This document shows positions 20,671 to 39,720 of a DNA stretch of 64,000 nt, piece by piece. The notes beneath the pieces are model-generated. The model saw nothing but the letters and a program-made list of their open reading frames with translations. It had not been told where the DNA came from and made no database searches. Source of the stretch: Podarcis cretensis (Eukaryota). Position numbers and translations under genes: made by a program. The stretch covers positions 21,886,001-21,950,000 of the forward strand of contig OX638152.1 of NCBI GenBank assembly GCA_951804945.1. Direction: 5' to 3'. Position 1 is the first letter of the stretch. Every line of letters starts with the position of its first letter.

Positions 20671-20777
20671 TTTTAGTATTGCTCTGTAAAGGTGATTTCG
20701 CTTCAAATCTAGGAGACAACAGAGTGAGTTGTCACTAAGGACTGGAAATTATACAGTAGCTGAGCTAGGAAATTTTA

Positions 20778-21302
<525 letters not shown>

Positions 21303-31717: not shown

Positions 31718-33323
31718 CTACACTGCTATTGCAAACAACCATGGGTCCCTATATTTATTAAACTTAATCACCTGACAATAGAACTCAGTTAGGGCTCTTG
31801 GCATGGGTGAAACCTCCTCCCATTCAGACCTACTGCTATGGTAGACTTGTACTTCATCAGTGATTTCATCAGGAGCATAATCTCCACCGAGGATGTAAAT
31901 TTTATCTTCTATTCCAACTGCTCCTGCATTAAAACCAGCACATTCAAAAGACCCTTCCCCTTTCCAGACATATGTCTCTGGGCAAAAACTATAAACCTTG
32001 TAGGTGGAAAGGTCACAGATGTACAATGTGCAGTTCACTGGAACAGCTTTGATTAAGGTGGCATGAAAGAACTGCCCAAATTCTGCTACCAGCTCAGACC
32101 ACTGATCAGTTGCGGCATTATATTTAAAGAAACAATCAAGAGATGGGTTAAAGGCATCAGTAATTTCTACTTCAGAACCAAGCACATAAATTATATTCTG
32201 ACATGCACTTGCTTCTGGATAATAGATACCTCTTGGTAAGGGACTCACAGATTTCCATTCCCCAGAGAGAGGACTGTATGCCTCCACATCTAAAAGACTT
32301 TTGATATCCTTAGATGCCCTTGTCTTCCCCCCTATTACAAACAGTTGATTTAGGGTCACAACAGATGCATGCATTGTCCTTGGCTTCTTCATGGCTGATA
32401 CCGATGAGAAGCTGTCCTTCACCGGACAATAACACCAAGTTTGGTCAGTGGCGTCATGATACGTTTCGGCAATATGAAGTCTAATTGTCCGGAAACAGTT
32501 CCCTACACATCCGCCAGTTATAAACAGCTTTTCACCATAACTAGATAAACTTGATCCTGGCAGATCTGTTATGTGCGTGTGCATCAGTTCTTTCCATTGA
32601 TCGGTTTTAATATTGTAACAAAACGTATGTCGATGTACTCCGTCTTCCTCAGTTTTGTGAACAAGTATGTACTGTTCTGTTGTTGAAGGGCGAGCGTCTG
32701 GAAACAAACCGCTAAAAGTTTGCACACTTTTAATTGCCTCATTGATTATTACTAAGCAACCAGCGCTTTCAAGTAGTTGTTCTTCAGAGTGCAATACTTC
32801 CTGCAGTGTCTTCTCCGATAACTGATGTAACCTTATTTTTTTCATCAAGTGGGGAAGATGCTTCTGTCTTGTTTCTAAGTTATGTTTCGTCCACCAAAGG
32901 GCAGCTTTTAACACAGATTCCTCATCTGGGACATTGAGCTCATCTGCTTCTATACATTTTAGCAGTATCTCGAAATTCATTTCCAGAAAATCATTTGACT
33001 GGAGCAGCAAGGAAAAATGGCGCTGGGCATATTTGAGGGTATGGTCAAACAACTGAGTGGACCCATAACTTTCGGAAATGGATAATAGCTGCAAACAGTT
33101 GACAAGATCAATGTTCTTAATTAGAAAGTCACTGCAAGCTTTTGAAAGAGTGGAAACTTGAAGAAAGGATGAAAGCTGAAATAACATTTCTACGTTATCG
33201 TTTGTTATCTCTGTTCTTCCAGTGTAGGCATAATCAAGAAATGCCTTCACTGCCTTGGGTGATAAATTACTAATAGTAACACTCCCATCATCTCTTTCTT
33301 TCATGTTAACTTCAAACATGGCC
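31718..33323 (-). CDS. KBTBD3: KBTBD3 large terminal coding exon (BTB-BACK-Kelch)
   Basis: Acceptor ctgcag|G GCC ATG restores R-AMFEVNMKE; BACK domain and Kelch repeats with GG motifs; spliced product is 609 aa. Confidence 0.95.
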
Positions 33324-34777
33324 CTGCAGTTAAAATACAGAAGATGAACACACAATAAATCATCACTGATATCTGTTCCATCTGAATATAATGTAGAACC
33401 AAAACCACACAGCTTAAGGTGAAGGGAATTATTTTCAATAAACATCTTTTGGACATTTTAGGTAAATTATTTGTAGAGTGAATAAATGCAAAACTAATGC
33501 AGTATAAAGCACATTTAAGAAGAAGCAGGGTTTTTCTATGAGGTTTTCATTACTTTTAAATAGTTCGGCATGATAAATTCAGGCATCATTCCAATCAAGG
33601 TATGATGAGTGTATATCTTAAAACACAAATTAGATCAGTTCATAGAATAGGATCCAAACTACAGGCTTACCTAAGGCAAGTCCACTGGAATTTTGGGATT
33701 TGGTTTATTTCTTTTAACAGCTACATCCACTCTCAGATTCAGATTGCTTAGAATCTTTAAATTCTTAAAAGCTCAGAGTGAGTAAAAGAGCATGATGTAT
33801 TGCCACAGGATTTCTGCTTCTGTACATCCACTTAGCCAATGTGGAGCCCACCTGATGCTGTTGGGCTATAACTTCCATCACCCCTGACCAAGAAGCCAAT
33901 GAGAGTTGCAGTTCCAACAACATAAGGTGGGCACAAACCAAGGTTCAATGGAAATGCAGCTCACCCTCCTGGAAGATAAGGGATACCCATGTTAACAGTG
34001 TTCTTGTTTTCATAGATAGCTTGTAATTTCTATTATACCCAAAGTCTGGAATGTATTATGGATGTATCTAGACCCGTTTTTGTTTCTGCTTCGATATCTT
34101 GTACCAGGTTTCTGTGATTGTTCTGTTTTATGCTTGATTTTGTATTTTAATAAAATTAAAATTATTTGTATGTCTTCTCTGAGATCTTCAATACTAGACA
34201 CTGTCAAACAGAGGATATGAGCCAAGCAATTTGATTTGAAATGCTATACTGTGTTGCATCATAGAGTATCCAAACAACAACAAAAATACTCATTGAGAAA
34301 CAGTTATTAAATATTCCTACAGATAAATAATTTTATTATCGATTAATGTTATCAATACACCCAGCAAAGGTGGTTTGCATATAGAAGCAGTATCTGTAGG
34401 TGCATGCCCTTCTGCATTGTGTTGAATTGGCTGTGTATAGCATTTAAGGCAGATGGTAATGCACATCTCCACCTGAAACCTACATATGAAGTTGTACACA
34501 GTGAATGGGTTGAAGTCATGCTATCTAACAAAAACAAATGATTTTAAAATCATTTCATAGCCATTTCATAGCTGACTGGATCTACTAATCTACTTTTGAA
34601 GGTCAACATAGGATGAGAATTACTTCTATGTTTTGAGTAGGGGGGTTGTGAATTGAATAGAAGAATGAATTAACTACATCACATATGTAACAGTGATATA
34701 TATATATATCTCCATGTTTATAGTCATATATATCTATATCTATATCTATGCACACAAGAACTACATCATAGGCTTAC

Positions 34778-35001
34778 CTGAAAAAGTCACTACATGCTGC
34801 CAATACGCAACGGTGACATGGGATCACTTCATCTTTCACAAGTATTTTGAAGTCAAAAAAGTTGTTTTGATCTCTGAAGCTTTGCAGTACATTTAAGATT
34901 TGTTGGCCATGGCCTTCAGCCACCAAGGAGCTGGCTTTCTGCTCACGAGATGAAATTCCATTGCAAGTTGGGGTGCTAATGAAATCATATTGGTTGTCCA
35001 T
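34778..35001 (-). CDS. KBTBD3: Kelch repeat and BTB domain protein 3, first coding exon
   Basis: MDNQYDF...HGQQILNVLQSFRDQNNFFDFKILVKDEVIPCHRCVLAACSDFFR (BTB N-terminus); donor AG|GTAAG at 34778; acceptor tccttcag| at 35025 upstream of the ATG. Confidence 0.93.
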
Positions 35002-35800
35002 GGTTTCTGCACTCTATTCTTATTGCTGAAGGAGATAATATAAAAGTTAGACACATACAACAAAATTACTGACCAAAAATGACTTCATAGGTATGGTATG
35101 CTAGGTGTGGTGATCCAAGGAATCTTTATCCATATTGGGAAAGGTGTATAAATATTTAAAATAATAAAAATAGCTAGAAATGCCATCCAAATAATACATC
35201 ACAGGTCGGAATCAAATCAGTAACTTGCCTCCGGGTATACTTTCAAAGCAAGTGATGAAGAAATCCATGCACAGAATGATGCTTGTATGCTGGTTTGCAG
35301 TGAATATATTTCACTGTAACCACCATGAGTTCCTAAGGCTTAAATGTTTTAAGTGACTTTGTTACTAAAAAAATAAAAATAATCTGGGGTATAAACTGTA
35401 ACTATTACTGCATTGCTTTATTTGTTTTTTTGAGGGAAAACAAGGTCCCAAAGAATTATATCCAAACCTTGCTATATAAACAACTGATTCATATATTCGA
35501 ACAGCGAGAGTTTGCCCACTTTCTTACTTGTTTGTGTTTTGCTGGTCAATGGTAGCCATTTTGGGCAGAAACCATGGGGGTAAAGAGAGAGATCGGACAA
35601 ATCAGTTTTTCCTCTTTGGCTTTTGCTGATTGGCTGCAGCAGTTTCAGGCAAAAAAGCATGGAGGGAGAAAACCTGGATTAGAAATGTTCCCACAGGAAA
35701 TGAAGGATATAATCTGCTCACTATGCAAACTTGTCACTCTGAGTAAAGGTTGAATACCATCCTAACAAATGTATTATGATACAAGCTTTCATGGAATATA

Positions 35801-37950
35801 CAGTATGATCACATCTTACACGGGGTTGCATTCTGGGGATAGAATGTAAAGCCAGAATACCATATGGTCAATACAACCCTTTAAAAACCAGGTAAATGGC
35901 CCATAAAAAGCACACCAGCATTTACCTGTGCACAATGACCGTGTTGCTTAGTCTTCCTCATCCTCTTCAGGGCTTGAGGTTGCTCCAGGAGATGATGGGC
36001 CAGGCCTGAGCAACAGATTGCGAGTTGCAGGCAAAGTGGTTGGCTCTGTTTCAGCTTCAGAAGTTGATTGTGTGGGCTCACTTGCTACCGCTGCGTTTTT
36101 TGTGAGAAACATGGTGCTTGGCAACTGTCGCTGTTGTCTCTTGAGCTGTTCAAACATTTCTCGATACAGTCTCAAACTGTCTGTGATACCCTGTGTGATT
36201 TTGAGGCTTCGTTCCATAGAGGGATCAAACTTAGCGATCAAATCATTCAGGTGTTTTGCTGTTTGGAAGACTTGAGCAAACTTATGCAGATTCCAACTTG
36301 CTGGCTCATCCTGTTCATCCTCCTCTTCATCTTCTGTACTTGATCTTAGCAGTTCCTCCAGCTCTTCATTAGTTAACGTTCCTCCATGGCCATCAATTAA
36401 CGCTTCAACTTCTTCCTCAGTGAGGTCAACAAAGCCATCACCACCCATTTGTCTGGCCATCTGGACAATATGTTCCACTTCATTGTCAATGGTTGGGAAA
36501 CCCTTAAAATCATCCACACATTCTTTCCACAACTTGCGCCAGCATGCATTCACCGATTCGGGCTTGATTGCATCTACTGCTTGCTTAATGTGAGTGATGC
36601 AACTGGCCATGTTAAAGGACTTCCAGCACTCAATGACATCAAAGTTGGGATCAGTATCCATAGCGTTACGTATCCATGAGAAGGTTAGCCTTGTGTAAGT
36701 TGCCCTGAAGCACCGAATCACACCTTGGTCGAGAGGTTGGATGATGGAGGCCGTGTTGGGCGGGAGAAAGACAACTTCAACATCATTATGTGCAAAGCAG
36801 AGTGCCTCGGGGTGACCAGGAGCATTGTCCACAATCAGCAACACCTTAAAGTTCAGTTGTTTCTCTTCAAGGTACCGCTTAACTTCCGGAACAAAGCAAT
36901 TGTGGAACCAATCTTGAAACGTTGCTGCAGTTACCCAAGCCTTTCTATTGGGTTGCCAAAACACAGGCAGGAGATTTTTGTTCTTGCCTTTCAGGGCACG
37001 GGGGACAGCAGACCTGTACAGCAAGCCTGGCTTTATTAAGTGCCCACCTGCACTGCCACAGAGCAACACAGTCACACGGTCGTTAGCTGCTTTGAAGCCA
37101 GGGGCTTGTTTTTCTGATTTGGAGATGTACGTCCGCTCAGGCATTTTTTTCCAGAACAGCCCCGTCTCAACAGCATTAAAAACTTGCTCAGGAAGGTATC
37201 CCTTTTCGTCTAACAGTTCCTTTAATTGCTTGGGGTAGGCTTTTGCTGCCTCTTTGTCTGCAGATGCAGACACTTCACCAGTTGTGTGCACATTTTTCGG
37301 TTTGAAGCGCTTCCTAAAACTAGTAAGCCAACCGTGACTGGCTTTGAATTCCTTCACAGGCTGGCCATCCTCGGCAGAAGGTTTGAAGAGTGCATAGAGG
37401 CTGAGAGCCTTTTGCCGTAACATCACGCCATCAGTAGGCATGCGTTTGCGGTTCATGTCTTCAAGCCACAAGTTTAATGCCTTCTCAGTCTTTGCTAAAG
37501 CCTCGTCGTCCACCTGGCTTGTCACCTGAGCAGTTATTGGAGCACTTGCTGCCACAATGTCATGGATTTCTCTCTCTCGAACCTGGATGGCATGGACGCT
37601 CGATTCGCTGTAGCCATATTTGCGTGCCACACTAGAGACTGACATGCCATCTCTCAAGCAGTCCAGCGCCGCTACTTTTTCTTGCCGTGTTGGAAGCAAA
37701 CGTTGTTTCTTGTGTTGCACGCCAGCAGAGGGCCCTGGCTTGCGTTTGGGGGCCATGTTTTCTTAATCACCAAGGCTACTCTCAATCGCCAACTGCACCT
37801 CCACACGTTCTCCAACGCTGCTGGCACTGACTCCACCTCATCACCCTTTCCTAAGCTGTACAATGATGGGTGGGATGTCGATGAGGTCCCCACCCCCCCG
37901 CCCGTCACGCACACAAATTTGGAAATTGCCTATGTTAAATGTGCATAAGC
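35801..37950 (-). mobile_element. Decayed Tigger-like DNA transposon body enclosing the ORF
   Basis: TA|CAGTATGATCACATCTTACAC terminus at 35801; only a partial counterpart (gtgcataag) near 37940. Right boundary uncertain. Confidence 0.55.
35948..37756 (-). CDS. Intact Tigger/pogo-family (TIGD/CENP-B-like) transposase-derived ORF, 602 aa
   Basis: N-terminal PKRK basic signal, psq-type HTH, CENP-B-type HTH (FKASHGWLTSFRKR), DDE_1-type domain with VFNAVETGLFWK / LLIVDNAPGHP / IQPLDQGVI (D310-D343, 32-residue spacing), acidic tail; Kozak aaaacATGG; no stops or frameshifts. Confidence 0.9.
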   Translation of the reverse strand: MAPKRKPGPSAGVQHKKQRLLPTRQEKVAALDCLRDGMSVSSVARKYGYSESSVHAIQVREREIHDIVAASAPITAQVTSQVDDEALAKTEKALNLWLEDMNRKRMPTDGVMLRQKALSLYALFKPSAEDGQPVKEFKASHGWLTSFRKRFKPKNVHTTGEVSASADKEAAKAYPKQLKELLDEKGYLPEQVFNAVETGLFWKKMPERTYISKSEKQAPGFKAANDRVTVLLCGSAGGHLIKPGLLYRSAVPRALKGKNKNLLPVFWQPNRKAWVTAATFQDWFHNCFVPEVKRYLEEKQLNFKVLLIVDNAPGHPEALCFAHNDVEVVFLPPNTASIIQPLDQGVIRCFRATYTRLTFSWIRNAMDTDPNFDVIECWKSFNMASCITHIKQAVDAIKPESVNACWRKLWKECVDDFKGFPTIDNEVEHIVQMARQMGGDGFVDLTEEEVEALIDGHGGTLTNEELEELLRSSTEDEEEDEQDEPASWNLHKFAQVFQTAKHLNDLIAKFDPSMERSLKITQGITDSLRLYREMFEQLKRQQRQLPSTMFLTKNAAVASEPTQSTSEAETEPTTLPATRNLLLRPGPSSPGATSSPEEDEED

Positions 37951-38449
37951 AACTCACTTCATCAGACACATAAAGTACTGTCCTCATTTACAGATGCATG
38001 TATATGTACCGGATCGGTCGTGGGTGGGTGCGATTGTAAAAGTTGCAGAAAGTCACTTAGGCCAAAAGGAAGTGCAGCAAATTAATTAACAGTGGTAAAG
38101 CAGAGCATGCTTGACGACATCTTGGCATCGGTAAGCCACTTAGGAGCAAAGGAAGCTGCAGGCTGCTGGTACATCTAGCTTGCTAGAACAAGCAACAGCT
38201 CTCCAGGGTTTCAGCCAGAGGACATTCCAAGCCCTACCTGGAGATGCTGTGGACTGAACCCACGACCTTCCGAATGCAAAGCAGAAAATCTGTCACTGAG
38301 CTATAGTCTTTCCTCTTCCACATATGGGGGGGGGGAGTCCACTATCACTGAAACTCTCTGCTGCTTTTCCTGCAAAAGGCCAACAAAACTGCCCTTCGGG
38401 AAACAGCAGCACTTATTCCTAGCATCATTCAGCTTGAATATCATCGCCT

Positions 38450-39720
38450 TACTGTCTATAGAAGCCTTCGCAGCTGGGAGGAACGCCTGGGAACTAAGGG
38501 CACACGCTACGTAACAGCTTCAGTGGCTGTTCTGCGCATGCCCCACGCGCATGCTCATCACCAGAGACGCCAATCTAAAACACGGCCCGTTCTATAGCGC
38601 TTTCCCTTTTACCTCAGACAACCCAGTTCAAGCTGCCAGGCTGGCGAGTTTAACACCCCTCGTTAGGAACGCGCCGCCTATAACCCAGCGGAGGTCTTCC
38701 ATTCTGTGGTTTCCCCCTCGGTGCGCGCCGCTAACCACCCACCTGCATCCAACGCAGCCACTCGGAGACCATCCGCTACGGCCTACATCTGCAAAAGCCG
38801 ACGCTGTCCTCCCATTGGCTCTTCCTGCTGCCCATCGATCGCGTCTTGTGTTGTGAGTGGCGCAAGTCCGTGTCGCTAAGAAAGCGCAAAAGCCCGCCTC
38901 CTCGTAACTGCCGGTGCCGCCGACGTTGTCAAGAGCGGGGACCGCCCCTCGCTCCCAAGAGCCATGAGCTCGATGAAAACAAAGAGACGCTTCAGGTTAT
39001 CAATTGAAAGTGAGCGTCGGGGAGGGGGGGAAGCAATATAAATAATATAGGACAGGGTTCTATATGGAAATTCAGATTCTCCCCCCGCTTCGCCCCGTAT
39101 TCTATGCAATGCTGTTGCCTCGCATGTGGCTGCTGTAAAGCAGAACTCAGAATGAGCACCGCGCGCAACCTCCTTTTTTTCTTGTTATACCTCTATGTAC
39201 TCTCCGGAGGGAGCTGGTGATTGGTCTGCCGTATTTTGCATTTGGCTCCCGATTGGCTGCTGCGTTTCCTCTCCCTCGCTTAACCTCCGCGAGTCCCTCC
39301 TTCCCTCCTCCTCTTTTTCGAACCTTCCTCGAAGGGAGCGAGCAGAGGGGAGAGTGAGCCACGCGCACTGCGGAGCTTGCACTTTATTTCCCCTCCAGTT
39401 TTGCTGCTGCAGTTCTGCAGCGCGGACTGCTTCGCCTGATTACTCGGAAGCAAGTCGCGTTGAGTCCAGCGGGGCTTCCTGCAGCCTTGGAGTCTCCTGG
39501 CTTAAAAAGTTTTGGGTGCAGTCCTAAACCACGCCTATACTCTGAAGTAAGCCCCGTTGAATTCGGCGAGGCTTACTCCCAGGTAAGTGGGGTTAAGAAT
39601 TGCAGCCATCTCTACGCTCAGTGCCCAGCACTTCGGATGTTCGAGTCCAGCCAGCCCCGTTCCCTCCTGGAAGCAGCAGCAGCGCTATTTCTCCACAGGA
39701 GAGCAACGCGTTCTCCCCTC
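38450..39720. promoter_or_regulatory. CpG island, bidirectional KBTBD3/AASDHPPT promoter
   Basis: CpG-rich between head-to-head genes; two NRF1-like GCGCATGC motifs at 38533-38555; CCAAT/ATTGG boxes near 38570, 38814, 39220 and 39252; minus-strand donor GAG|GTAAAA at 38613 (candidate KBTBD3 exon 1 end). Confidence 0.8.

What the first reader, a model, noticed from the sequence alone, without database searches (positions are those of the whole stretch)
35948..37756. Candidate domesticated Tigger/pogo transposase gene nested in the 5' intron of KBTBD3
Seen: a 1.8-kb uninterrupted ORF with both HTH DNA-binding modules, a basic N-terminus and strong Kozak context. Every other TE-derived coding remnant in this window is truncated or decayed. 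The first catalytic motif reads VFNAVETG instead of xFNxDETG (GTT at 37169-37171, V196), while D310 and D343 are retained. Only one recognisable terminus survives. Known: pogo transposases were domesticated repeatedly (CENP-B, JRK, TIGD1-7), often keeping DNA binding and losing catalysis; I know of no such gene between KBTBD3 and AASDHPPT in mammals. Inference: an intact ORF with decayed TIRs and a dead triad fits purifying selection on a host DNA-binding function in this lizard lineage.
Basis: partly seen in the sequence, partly recalled or inferred. Interest (0 to 1): 0.85.

Follow-up and report, generated by a model that had tools for sequence, protein, structure and literature searches.

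The report
Retained dead Tigger transposase gene in lacertids
A jumping-gene enzyme that landed in the first intron of the lizard gene KBTBD3 has lost its cutting activity and its mobile ends, yet wall lizards and their relatives have kept its reading frame intact, so it is probably a young host gene under weak selection, of a kind already known from other vertebrates.

Summary
Window 35948-37756 (-) is an intact 602-aa pogo/Tigger transposase ORF in the 5'-UTR intron of KBTBD3, on the same strand. The first catalytic Asp is replaced by Val (V196), and no inverted-repeat termini remain.

It is not a young multi-copy element. One full-length (600-603 aa) orthologue exists in Podarcis lilfordi, P. 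raffonei, P. muralis, Lacerta agilis and Zootoca vivipara, at 91-95% identity. RefSeq names two of them 'KBTBD3 isoform X2'. Contigs of three further lizards join the ORF to the same unique flanks. All orthologues share V196. Zootoca and P. raffonei have each lost another triad Asp.

Selection keeps the frame:
- 131 amino-acid changes have occurred without a stop (about 7 expected, P~8e-4).
- There are no frameshifts (12-18 expected).
- Replacements are more conservative than chance (P=0.002).
- The ORF core diverges 1.1-1.5% against 2.9-3.3% for the intron.

Constraint is weak overall (rough omega 0.3-0.7). It lies in the dead DDE core, not in the HTH DNA-binding modules, which evolve almost neutrally. 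Expression is unproven: ORF contigs in a possible RNA run are no deeper than intron contigs.

Verdict: a plausible lacertid-specific domesticated Tigger gene, already present as an automatic RefSeq model. The claim that selection acts on DNA binding is not supported. Codon-level dN/dS could not be run.

The parts
35948..37756 (-). Intact 602-aa Tigger/pogo transposase-derived ORF, stop codon included
37691..37756 (-). Basic N-terminal tract (aa 1-22, net charge +6, same charge in all orthologues); NLS-like by inference
37532..37690 (-). HTH module 1 (aa 23-75, CENP-B N-type); the most variable region among orthologues
37298..37486 (-). HTH module 2 (aa 91-153, HTH_Tnp_Tc5)
36539..37186 (-). 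RNase-H-like DDE core (aa 191-406; Pfam DDE_1 covers aa 226-406); the least variable region with the most conservative replacements
37169..37171 (-). GTT = V196 at the first catalytic Asp position (FNAVETG); shared by all lacertid orthologues
36827..36829 (-). D310, second triad Asp; retained here, replaced in Zootoca (IVADAPGH)
36728..36730 (-). D343, third triad Asp; retained here, Asn in P. raffonei
36287..36439 (-). Acidic patch (aa 440-490, net charge -19 to -22 in all orthologues)
35920..35928 (-). Donor-like site CAG|GTAAAT 22 nt after the stop codon (cut between 35926 and 35925); use not shown
37856..37875 (-). Acceptor-like site (pyrimidine-rich tract, then ...TACAG| with the AG ending at 37856), 100 nt upstream of the ATG; use not shown
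35799..35812 (-). Only candidate element end (...CATACTG|TA); no matching 5' repeat exists
34778..35025 (-). KBTBD3 exon carrying the start codon (ATG 35001-34999) and the start of the BTB domain; one mismatch in 251 bases in organism H
31718..33452 (-). KBTBD3 main coding exon (BTB-BACK-Kelch); acceptor near 33452
38400..39200 (.). CpG-rich stretch (CpG observed/expected 0.8-1.1), the presumed KBTBD3 promoter and exon 1 region; inferred, not mapped

Best explanation
An old Tigger (pogo-superfamily) DNA transposon inserted into the 5'-UTR intron of KBTBD3, in the same orientation. This happened before Podarcis, Lacerta and Zootoca diverged.

Shown: the copy lost its terminal repeats and its first catalytic Asp (D196V), so it can neither cut nor be cut. 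Its 1.8-kb reading frame has since been kept open in every lacertid examined.

Shown, but only roughly quantified: selection on the amino-acid sequence is weak. It is concentrated on the inactive RNase-H-like core and the region just after it. The invariantly charged N-terminal tract and the acidic patch are also kept.

Inferred: the protein is made from an alternative KBTBD3 transcript that starts at the CpG-island promoter and includes the ORF as an extra exon. This rests on the acceptor-like site 100 nt upstream of the ATG, the donor-like site 22 nt after the stop, and the RefSeq name 'KBTBD3 isoform X2'.

Inferred: the protein acts as a non-catalytic nuclear protein whose conserved dead core and acidic region serve as an interaction scaffold. 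The fast-changing HTH modules would give at most loose or shifting DNA recognition.
For: Family: DDE_1, Tc5 HTH and CENP-B-type HTH.

One full-length orthologue per species: five other lacertid species each have one protein of 600-603 aa at 91-95% identity. Nothing lies between 91% and about 70%.

Orthology:
- RefSeq names the protein KBTBD3 isoform X2 in P. muralis and Zootoca.
- The host chromosomes are 100-108 Mb in all five species.
- In organisms E, F and G, single contigs join the ORF to the window's unique flanks. The only gap inside the ORF is 3 nt.

Dead triad: V196 is present in 8 of 8 sequences. D310 is lost in Zootoca and D343 is Asn in P. raffonei.

Selection:
- 131 amino-acid events with no stop, against 7.1 expected (P=8e-4).
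- No frameshift, against 12-18 expected (P of 7e-6 or less). The only indels are three in-frame ones.
- Mean BLOSUM62 of replacements is +0.07 against -0.36 under neutrality (P=0.0017).
- ORF core against intron: 1.12% vs 3.30% in E (P=6e-4) and 1.54% vs 2.87% in F.

Family contrast: in turtles the same family exists as many truncated copies. No lacertid fragment was found.

Termini: no TIR pair.
Against: - No codon-level dN/dS was possible.
- The indirect omega is high (about 0.4 for the whole ORF in E, about 0.7 in H). In H the ORF is not significantly slower than the intron (P=0.3).
- The KBTBD3 exon next door is about ten times more conserved (1 mismatch in 251 bases).
- The HTH modules behave almost neutrally.
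- In the one possible RNA run, ORF contigs have depth 3-7, like the intron contigs. The KBTBD3 exon has depth 33, and no splice joint was reported.
- Gnomon models can be driven by protein homology alone.
- Orthology in L. agilis and P. lilfordi rests only on sequence similarity and chromosome size.
- The copy number in the window's own genome was not measured.
Confidence: 0.65

Rival explanations
1. The reduced divergence reflects non-coding constraint, such as a promoter-proximal regulatory element of KBTBD3 or AASDHPPT. Alternatively it reflects a protein function that has since lapsed, so the ORF is now drifting towards a pseudogene.
For: The ORF starts about 700 bp from the CpG island. 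Overall constraint is weak, and in H the ORF is not distinguishable from the intron. RNA-contig depth is at intron level. Radical changes occur in HTH1 (L31P and R35G in P. muralis).
Against: Regulatory constraint does not prevent stops or frameshifts. It also does not favour conservative amino-acid replacements. All 8 sequences, plus organism E over the whole ORF and organism G over 35948-37262, keep the frame.
Confidence: 0.15
2. The ORF matters mainly as an alternative exon of KBTBD3. Including it puts a 602-codon ORF ahead of the KBTBD3 start codon and so lowers KBTBD3 output. On this view the encoded protein is a by-product.
For: Same strand. Acceptor-like and donor-like sites bracket the ORF. 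RefSeq names it KBTBD3 isoform X2. An earlier scan note, s1-839512, raised the same idea.
Against: Such a role would need neither a 1.8-kb open frame nor conservative replacements. Any short upstream ORF would do the same. No splice joint was seen.
Confidence: 0.1
3. Neutral relic: the frame has survived by chance in a slowly evolving region.
For: The amino-acid divergence is high for a gene (5% within Podarcis, 8-9% to Zootoca).
Against: P(no stop) is about 8e-4 and P(no frameshift) is 7e-6 or less. Replacements are biased towards conservative ones. The core diverges 2-3 times more slowly than the intron.
Confidence: 0.05
4. A still autonomous or recently active Tigger copy.
For: The ORF is full-length. 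Other diverged or deleted copies of the family exist in lacertids. The scan noted a near-intact Tigger elsewhere in this genome (s1-839642, not checked).
Against: V196 sits at the first catalytic Asp in all species. There are no TIRs. The ORF is fixed at one orthologous site, and no near-identical paralogue appears in the protein databases.
Confidence: 0.02

Closest known systems
Stationary pogo/Tigger-derived genes of vertebrates (TIGD2-7, JRK, JRKL, CENPB; Gao et al. 2020, PMC7386202)
   Same: It derives from a whole transposase and keeps the CENP-B-type HTH, the Tc5 HTH and the full DDE_1 fold. The triad is degraded, there are no TIRs, and it is fixed at one locus.
   Different: It is restricted to lacertids rather than shared across mammals or vertebrates. 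It is not orthologous to any of these genes: the best named TIGD1 match (Dasypus) is 41% identical and lies far away on the tree. Constraint is much weaker (rough omega 0.3-0.7 against Ka/Ks 0.055-0.21). It is nested in a host intron.
'TIGD1-like' lineage-restricted sequences that Gao et al. 2020 set aside as 'akin to pseudogenes'
   Same: It carries the same automatic name and has a narrow taxonomic range.
   Different: On the evidence available it is a single copy per genome at an orthologous site. Its frame has been kept through 131 amino-acid changes, so it is not pseudogene-like.
Lacertid KRAB-Tigger fusion gene (P0004, P0005, P0126; 846-854 aa)
   Same: It is the sister clade on the tree, from the same Tigger family (SH-aLRT 93). 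It has also lost the first catalytic Asp (FNAGETG) and evolves at a similar protein rate.
   Different: It is fused to an N-terminal KRAB domain and lies on another chromosome (121-127 Mb). Identity is 65-66%.
Host-transposase fusions born by alternative splicing (KRABINER, SETMAR; Cosby et al., bioRxiv 10.1101/2020.05.07.082677)
   Same: A transposon in a host intron, in the same orientation, with splice-like sites at its edges, modelled as an alternative isoform of the host gene.
   Different: No host domain is joined. An in-frame stop lies 9 nt before the ATG, the ORF has its own stop, and all orthologues are about 600 aa.

Membership tests
pogo/Tigger transposase superfamily | DDE_1 (RNase-H-like) domain | tested here: met
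   PF03184, E 9.7e-39, full profile length
pogo/Tigger transposase superfamily | Bipartite N-terminal DNA-binding region (CENP-B_N HTH plus HTH_Tnp_Tc5) | tested here: met
   Tc5 HTH E 3.7e-11. HTH1 is sub-threshold in Pfam. A family profile aligns positions 19-152 to CENP-B 1HLV, E 3.9e-8.
pogo/Tigger transposase superfamily (active element) | Intact D,D,D catalytic triad | tested here: not met
   V at the first Asp column. D310 and D343 are present. The assignment of the first Asp rests on the alignment column and on the known DE(T/S) motif of Tc1/mariner/pogo; no structure was used.
pogo/Tigger transposase superfamily (active element) | Terminal inverted repeats with TA target duplication | tested here: not met
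   No inverted pair above shuffle level
Domesticated (stationary) transposase gene | Single copy at an orthologous locus in several species | tested here: met
   One full-length protein per annotated lacertid. Contigs of E, F and G join the ORF to the same flanks. RefSeq names it KBTBD3 isoform X2 in two genera. The genome-wide copy count in the window species was not done.
Domesticated (stationary) transposase gene | Purifying selection (Ka/Ks significantly below 1) | tested here: inconclusive
   Indirect tests are positive: no stops or frameshifts, conservative replacements, and a core slower than the intron. No codon-level Ka/Ks was possible. The rough omega is 0.3-0.7, about 0.1-0.4 in the core and 0.6-0.9 at the N-terminus.
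Domesticated (stationary) transposase gene | Expressed as mature mRNA and protein | tested here: inconclusive
   ORF pieces are present in contigs of a possible RNA run at depth 3-7, equal to the intron pieces. The KBTBD3 exon is at 33. No joint was reported.
TIGD1 orthologue | Orthology to mammalian TIGD1 | tested here: not met
   41% identity to Dasypus TIGD1, which lies outside the 32-row clade on the tree
Host-transposase fusion gene | Transposase domain joined in frame to a host domain | tested here: not met
   In-frame TAA 9 nt upstream of the ATG, own stop codon, and all orthologues 600-603 aa without a host domain

The most novel reading that the evidence does not exclude
Lacertids kept two genes from one Tigger family: this stand-alone dead transposase and the KRAB-fused paralogue. 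The two might work together, or in parallel, as a lineage-specific control system for cognate Tigger elements and MITEs. The near-neutral or rapid change of the HTH modules would then reflect a recognition arms race, and the conserved dead core would serve pairing or recruitment.
Probability: 0.1. Interest if true: 0.7.

Novelty: new member of a known kind. Interest (0 to 1): 0.45.

Why it matters
Transposase domestication is well documented, but mostly for old, strongly constrained genes. This case looks like an early or weakly constrained stage. The copy is still nested in its host intron and is probably expressed through the host promoter. Its catalysis has been lost several times over, and selection is visible on the dead catalytic fold instead of on DNA binding.

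If confirmed with codon models and expression data, it would be a useful natural example of what is actually retained first when a transposase becomes a host gene. It would also show that 'TIGD1-like' sequences dismissed as pseudogene-like can include real lineage-specific genes. It does not open a new category.

Tried and rejected
I therefore could not fetch orthologous DNA, and no codon-level dN/dS or direct synteny alignment was possible.
- Read laying (single call allowed) printed only 40 of 443 differences. Only three fell in the ORF (36232, 37444, 37668), so a codon-position test was impossible. I used the per-contig mismatch counts instead.
- No raw-read runs were offered, only Logan contigs. 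Read depth, copy number, strand and a read-level check of 37170 were therefore unavailable. The Val is instead confirmed by its conservation in the orthologues.
- The possible RNA run gave no splice joints, so there is no verdict on expression.
- TIR search by inverted repeats and by local alignment found nothing above shuffles.
- A sequence search of solved structures reached only the CENP-B and related HTH domains, not a DDE core with a mapped active site.
- The search of earlier findings by sequence was blank.
- Literature searches found no description of this gene. Zv817 of Zootoca (PMC10058329) is a different locus.
- I considered and dropped structure prediction and complex prediction, because neither would change the verdict.
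KBTBD3 exons were examined one at a time.

Full report
**Observation**

An in-frame TAA lies 9 nt upstream of the ATG, and the start context is aacATGg.

Pfam finds DDE_1 (E 1e-38) and HTH_Tnp_Tc5 (E 4e-11). The first HTH reaches only a sub-threshold HTH_23 match. A profile of the family does align positions 19-152 to the CENP-B DNA-binding domain 1HLV at E 4e-8, so both HTH modules are present.

V196 is GTT at 37169-37171. D310 (36827-36829) and D343 (36728-36730) are retained. The V196 column carries Asp in most relatives. Pfam's DDE_1 model starts only at residue 226. Calling V196 'the first catalytic Asp' therefore rests on the alignment column and on the established DE(T/S) motif of Tc1/mariner/pogo transposases, not on a structure.

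No second copy lies in the window. None of the other ORFs of 110 aa or more that I scanned has a TE domain.

**Context**

A proper KBTBD3 exon lies at 35025-34778. It has an acceptor (...ttcag|), the ATG at 35001-34999, the start of the BTB domain, and a donor (CAG|gtaagc). The BTB-BACK-Kelch exon follows at about 33452-31718, on the same strand.

The first exon is presumed to lie in the CpG-rich stretch at 38400-39200.

A donor-like CAG|GTAAAT lies 22 nt after the Tigger stop (cut 35926|35925). An acceptor-like pyrimidine tract followed by TACAG| ends at 37856, 100 nt before the ATG. One AATAAA lies at 35422. An earlier scan note (s1-839512) had pointed to such signals. I could locate them but could not show that they are used.

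**Orthologues**

The protein search gave one 603-aa protein in Podarcis lilfordi (95%) and a cluster at 91-95% identity. The cluster holds P. raffonei, P. muralis (two assemblies), Lacerta agilis and Zootoca vivipara (two assemblies). The next hits are at 70% or less.

Two of these records are named 'kelch repeat and BTB domain-containing protein 3 isoform X2', in P. muralis and Zootoca. NCBI therefore modelled the ORF inside KBTBD3 in two other genera. The host chromosomes are 100-108 Mb in all five species.

Logan contigs of three further organisms (E, F, G) join the ORF to the window's unique flanks on both sides. In E, four overlapping contigs cover the whole ORF with only a 3-nt gap. On the tree the window groups with Podarcis.

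The element is thus fixed at one orthologous locus across Podarcis, Lacerta and Zootoca. From my own knowledge, not tested here, that is a divergence of tens of millions of years.

**Catalysis**

All eight orthologous sequences read FNAVETG. V196 is therefore ancestral and not a sequencing error.

Zootoca has additionally replaced the second Asp (IVADAPGH), and P. raffonei the third (PLNQG). Catalysis is not being maintained.

**Is the frame kept by selection?**

- Parsimony counts 131 amino-acid changes among the eight sequences. With the window's codons and the transition bias seen in the flanks, unfiltered mutation would have produced 7.1 nonsense changes alongside them. None is seen (P=8e-4).
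- The flanks show about one indel per 8-12 substitutions, so 12-18 frameshifts would be expected. None is seen, only three in-frame indels (P between 2e-8 and 7e-6).
- Replacements are more conservative than the single-nucleotide neutral spectrum. Mean BLOSUM62 is +0.07 against -0.36 (P=0.0017), and radical changes make up 15% against 27%.
- Per-contig mismatch counts put the ORF core (36197-37263) at 1.12% against 3.30% for the intron in E (P=6e-4). In F the figures are 1.54% against 2.87% (P=0.065, or 0.016 against all flanks). In G they are about 1.6% against 2.35%.

Neutral decay is rejected.

**How strong is the selection, and where does it act?**

It is weak. If synonymous sites are assumed to move at the intron rate, the whole ORF in E gives omega of about 0.4. 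In H the ORF (3.1%) is not significantly slower than the intron (4.2%), while the KBTBD3 exon differs at 1 base of 251. Accepted pogo-derived genes have Ka/Ks of 0.055-0.21 (PMC7386202).

The constraint is uneven:

| Region | Events per site | Mean BLOSUM62 |
|---|---|---|
| HTH1 | 0.34 | 0.0 |
| HTH2 | 0.21 | -0.23 |
| DDE core | 0.16 | +0.5 |

The HTH modules are more variable than the DDE core (Fisher P=0.012). The first 522 bp of the ORF diverge at about 3%, roughly the flank rate. That figure is approximate, because it comes from a mixed contig and the region is CpG-rich.

The charge pattern is invariant: a basic tract of +6 and an acidic patch of -19 to -22. The dead catalytic fold is the part being kept.

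**Family**

The orthologue clade (SH-aLRT 100) is sister to a lacertid KRAB-Tigger fusion gene (93). That gene has independently lost the same Asp (FNAGETG). Both nest in a family that is multi-copy in turtles (99).

A search with the 255-aa core found many truncated turtle copies (149-441 aa, 73-82% identity, several per genome) and no lacertid fragment.

Joints inside the ORF in E, F and G (36160>36421, 36841>37641, 37413>37643) and a fragment with 20 mismatches in 156 bases show that diverged, internally deleted relatives do exist in lacertid genomes. The family was once mobile there, but nothing suggests near-identical intact copies.

**Expression**

No raw-read runs were offered. In the one possible RNA run (organism H), ORF contigs have depth 3-7, like the intron contigs (2.4-5.8), while KBTBD3 exon 2 has depth 33. 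No splice joint was listed. The tool warns that contig depth cannot rank parts of a gene. Expression as a mature mRNA remains unproven.

**Termini**

There is no inverted pair: the best local score is 22, and the shuffle maximum is 32. Only a lone ...CATACTG|TA near 35803 remains, directly next to a high-copy repeat at 35400-35800.

**Literature**

No paper in the library links KBTBD3 and Tigger in reptiles.
- Gao et al. 2020 list 12 stationary pogo-derived genes. They set lineage-restricted TIGD1-like sequences aside as pseudogene-like.
- Cosby et al. catalogue fusions only. This ORF is not a fusion.

**Limits**

- The read laying difference table was truncated, so codon-level dN/dS could not be computed.
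- The copy number in the window's own genome was not measured.
- AASDHPPT was not verified.

**Verdict**

This is a real, orthologously retained, catalytically dead Tigger-derived ORF under weak purifying selection. It is a plausible young lacertid-specific domesticated gene and a new member of a known kind, already present as automatic gene models. Its mode of action is uncertain, and the evidence goes against the proposed DNA-binding rationale.

Noticed in passing
not in the window; proteins P0004, P0005, P0126-P0145: Lacertids carry a second retained gene from the same Tigger family, fused to an N-terminal KRAB domain (846-854 aa). It has Gly at the first catalytic Asp (FNAGETG). It is the sister clade to the KBTBD3-intron gene and evolves at a similar protein rate.
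   Followed up: partly
not in the window; P0003, P0006, P0015, P0018, P0022, P0146-P0151 and others: The nearest relatives outside lacertids are multi-copy, mostly truncated Tigger ORFs of turtles (70-82% identity). Other squamates reach only about 50%. This patchy distribution suggests either horizontal transfer or differential loss.
   Followed up: partly
window 38190-38400: A tRNA-derived SINE (Sauria/Squam1-like by eye) lies between the Tigger ATG and the CpG island. Contig depth there is about 140-400 times the single-copy level in three lizard runs.
   Followed up: no
window 35400-35800: A high-copy repeat directly abuts the candidate Tigger 3' end. Many contigs show variable internal deletions of 37-128 bp (joints 35477-35680). 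Its family is not identified, and it could be a MITE related to the element's terminus.
   Followed up: no
window 36160-37643: Joints inside the ORF in organisms E, F and G (skips of 260, 799 and 229 bp) and one fragment with 20 mismatches in 156 bases point to internally deleted, diverged copies of this Tigger family elsewhere in lacertid genomes.
   Followed up: partly
window 20775-21290 (-): An ORF with a Myb/SANT-like DNA-binding domain (Myb_DNA-bind_5, E 1e-23). By memory of the mammalian gene order this fits MSANTD4 downstream of KBTBD3. A GC-rich stretch (54.5%) lies at 24-26 kb.
   Followed up: no
window 34687-34756: An (AT)n/(ATAG)n microsatellite begins about 20 bp after the donor of the KBTBD3 ATG exon. 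Contigs of all the runs laid break there.
   Followed up: no
proteins P0123 vs P0125, and P0002 vs P0124: Two assemblies of the same species differ by 17 (P. muralis) and 15 (Zootoca) amino acids in this protein. This is a high within-species difference. It fits deep intraspecific lineages combined with weak constraint.
   Followed up: partly
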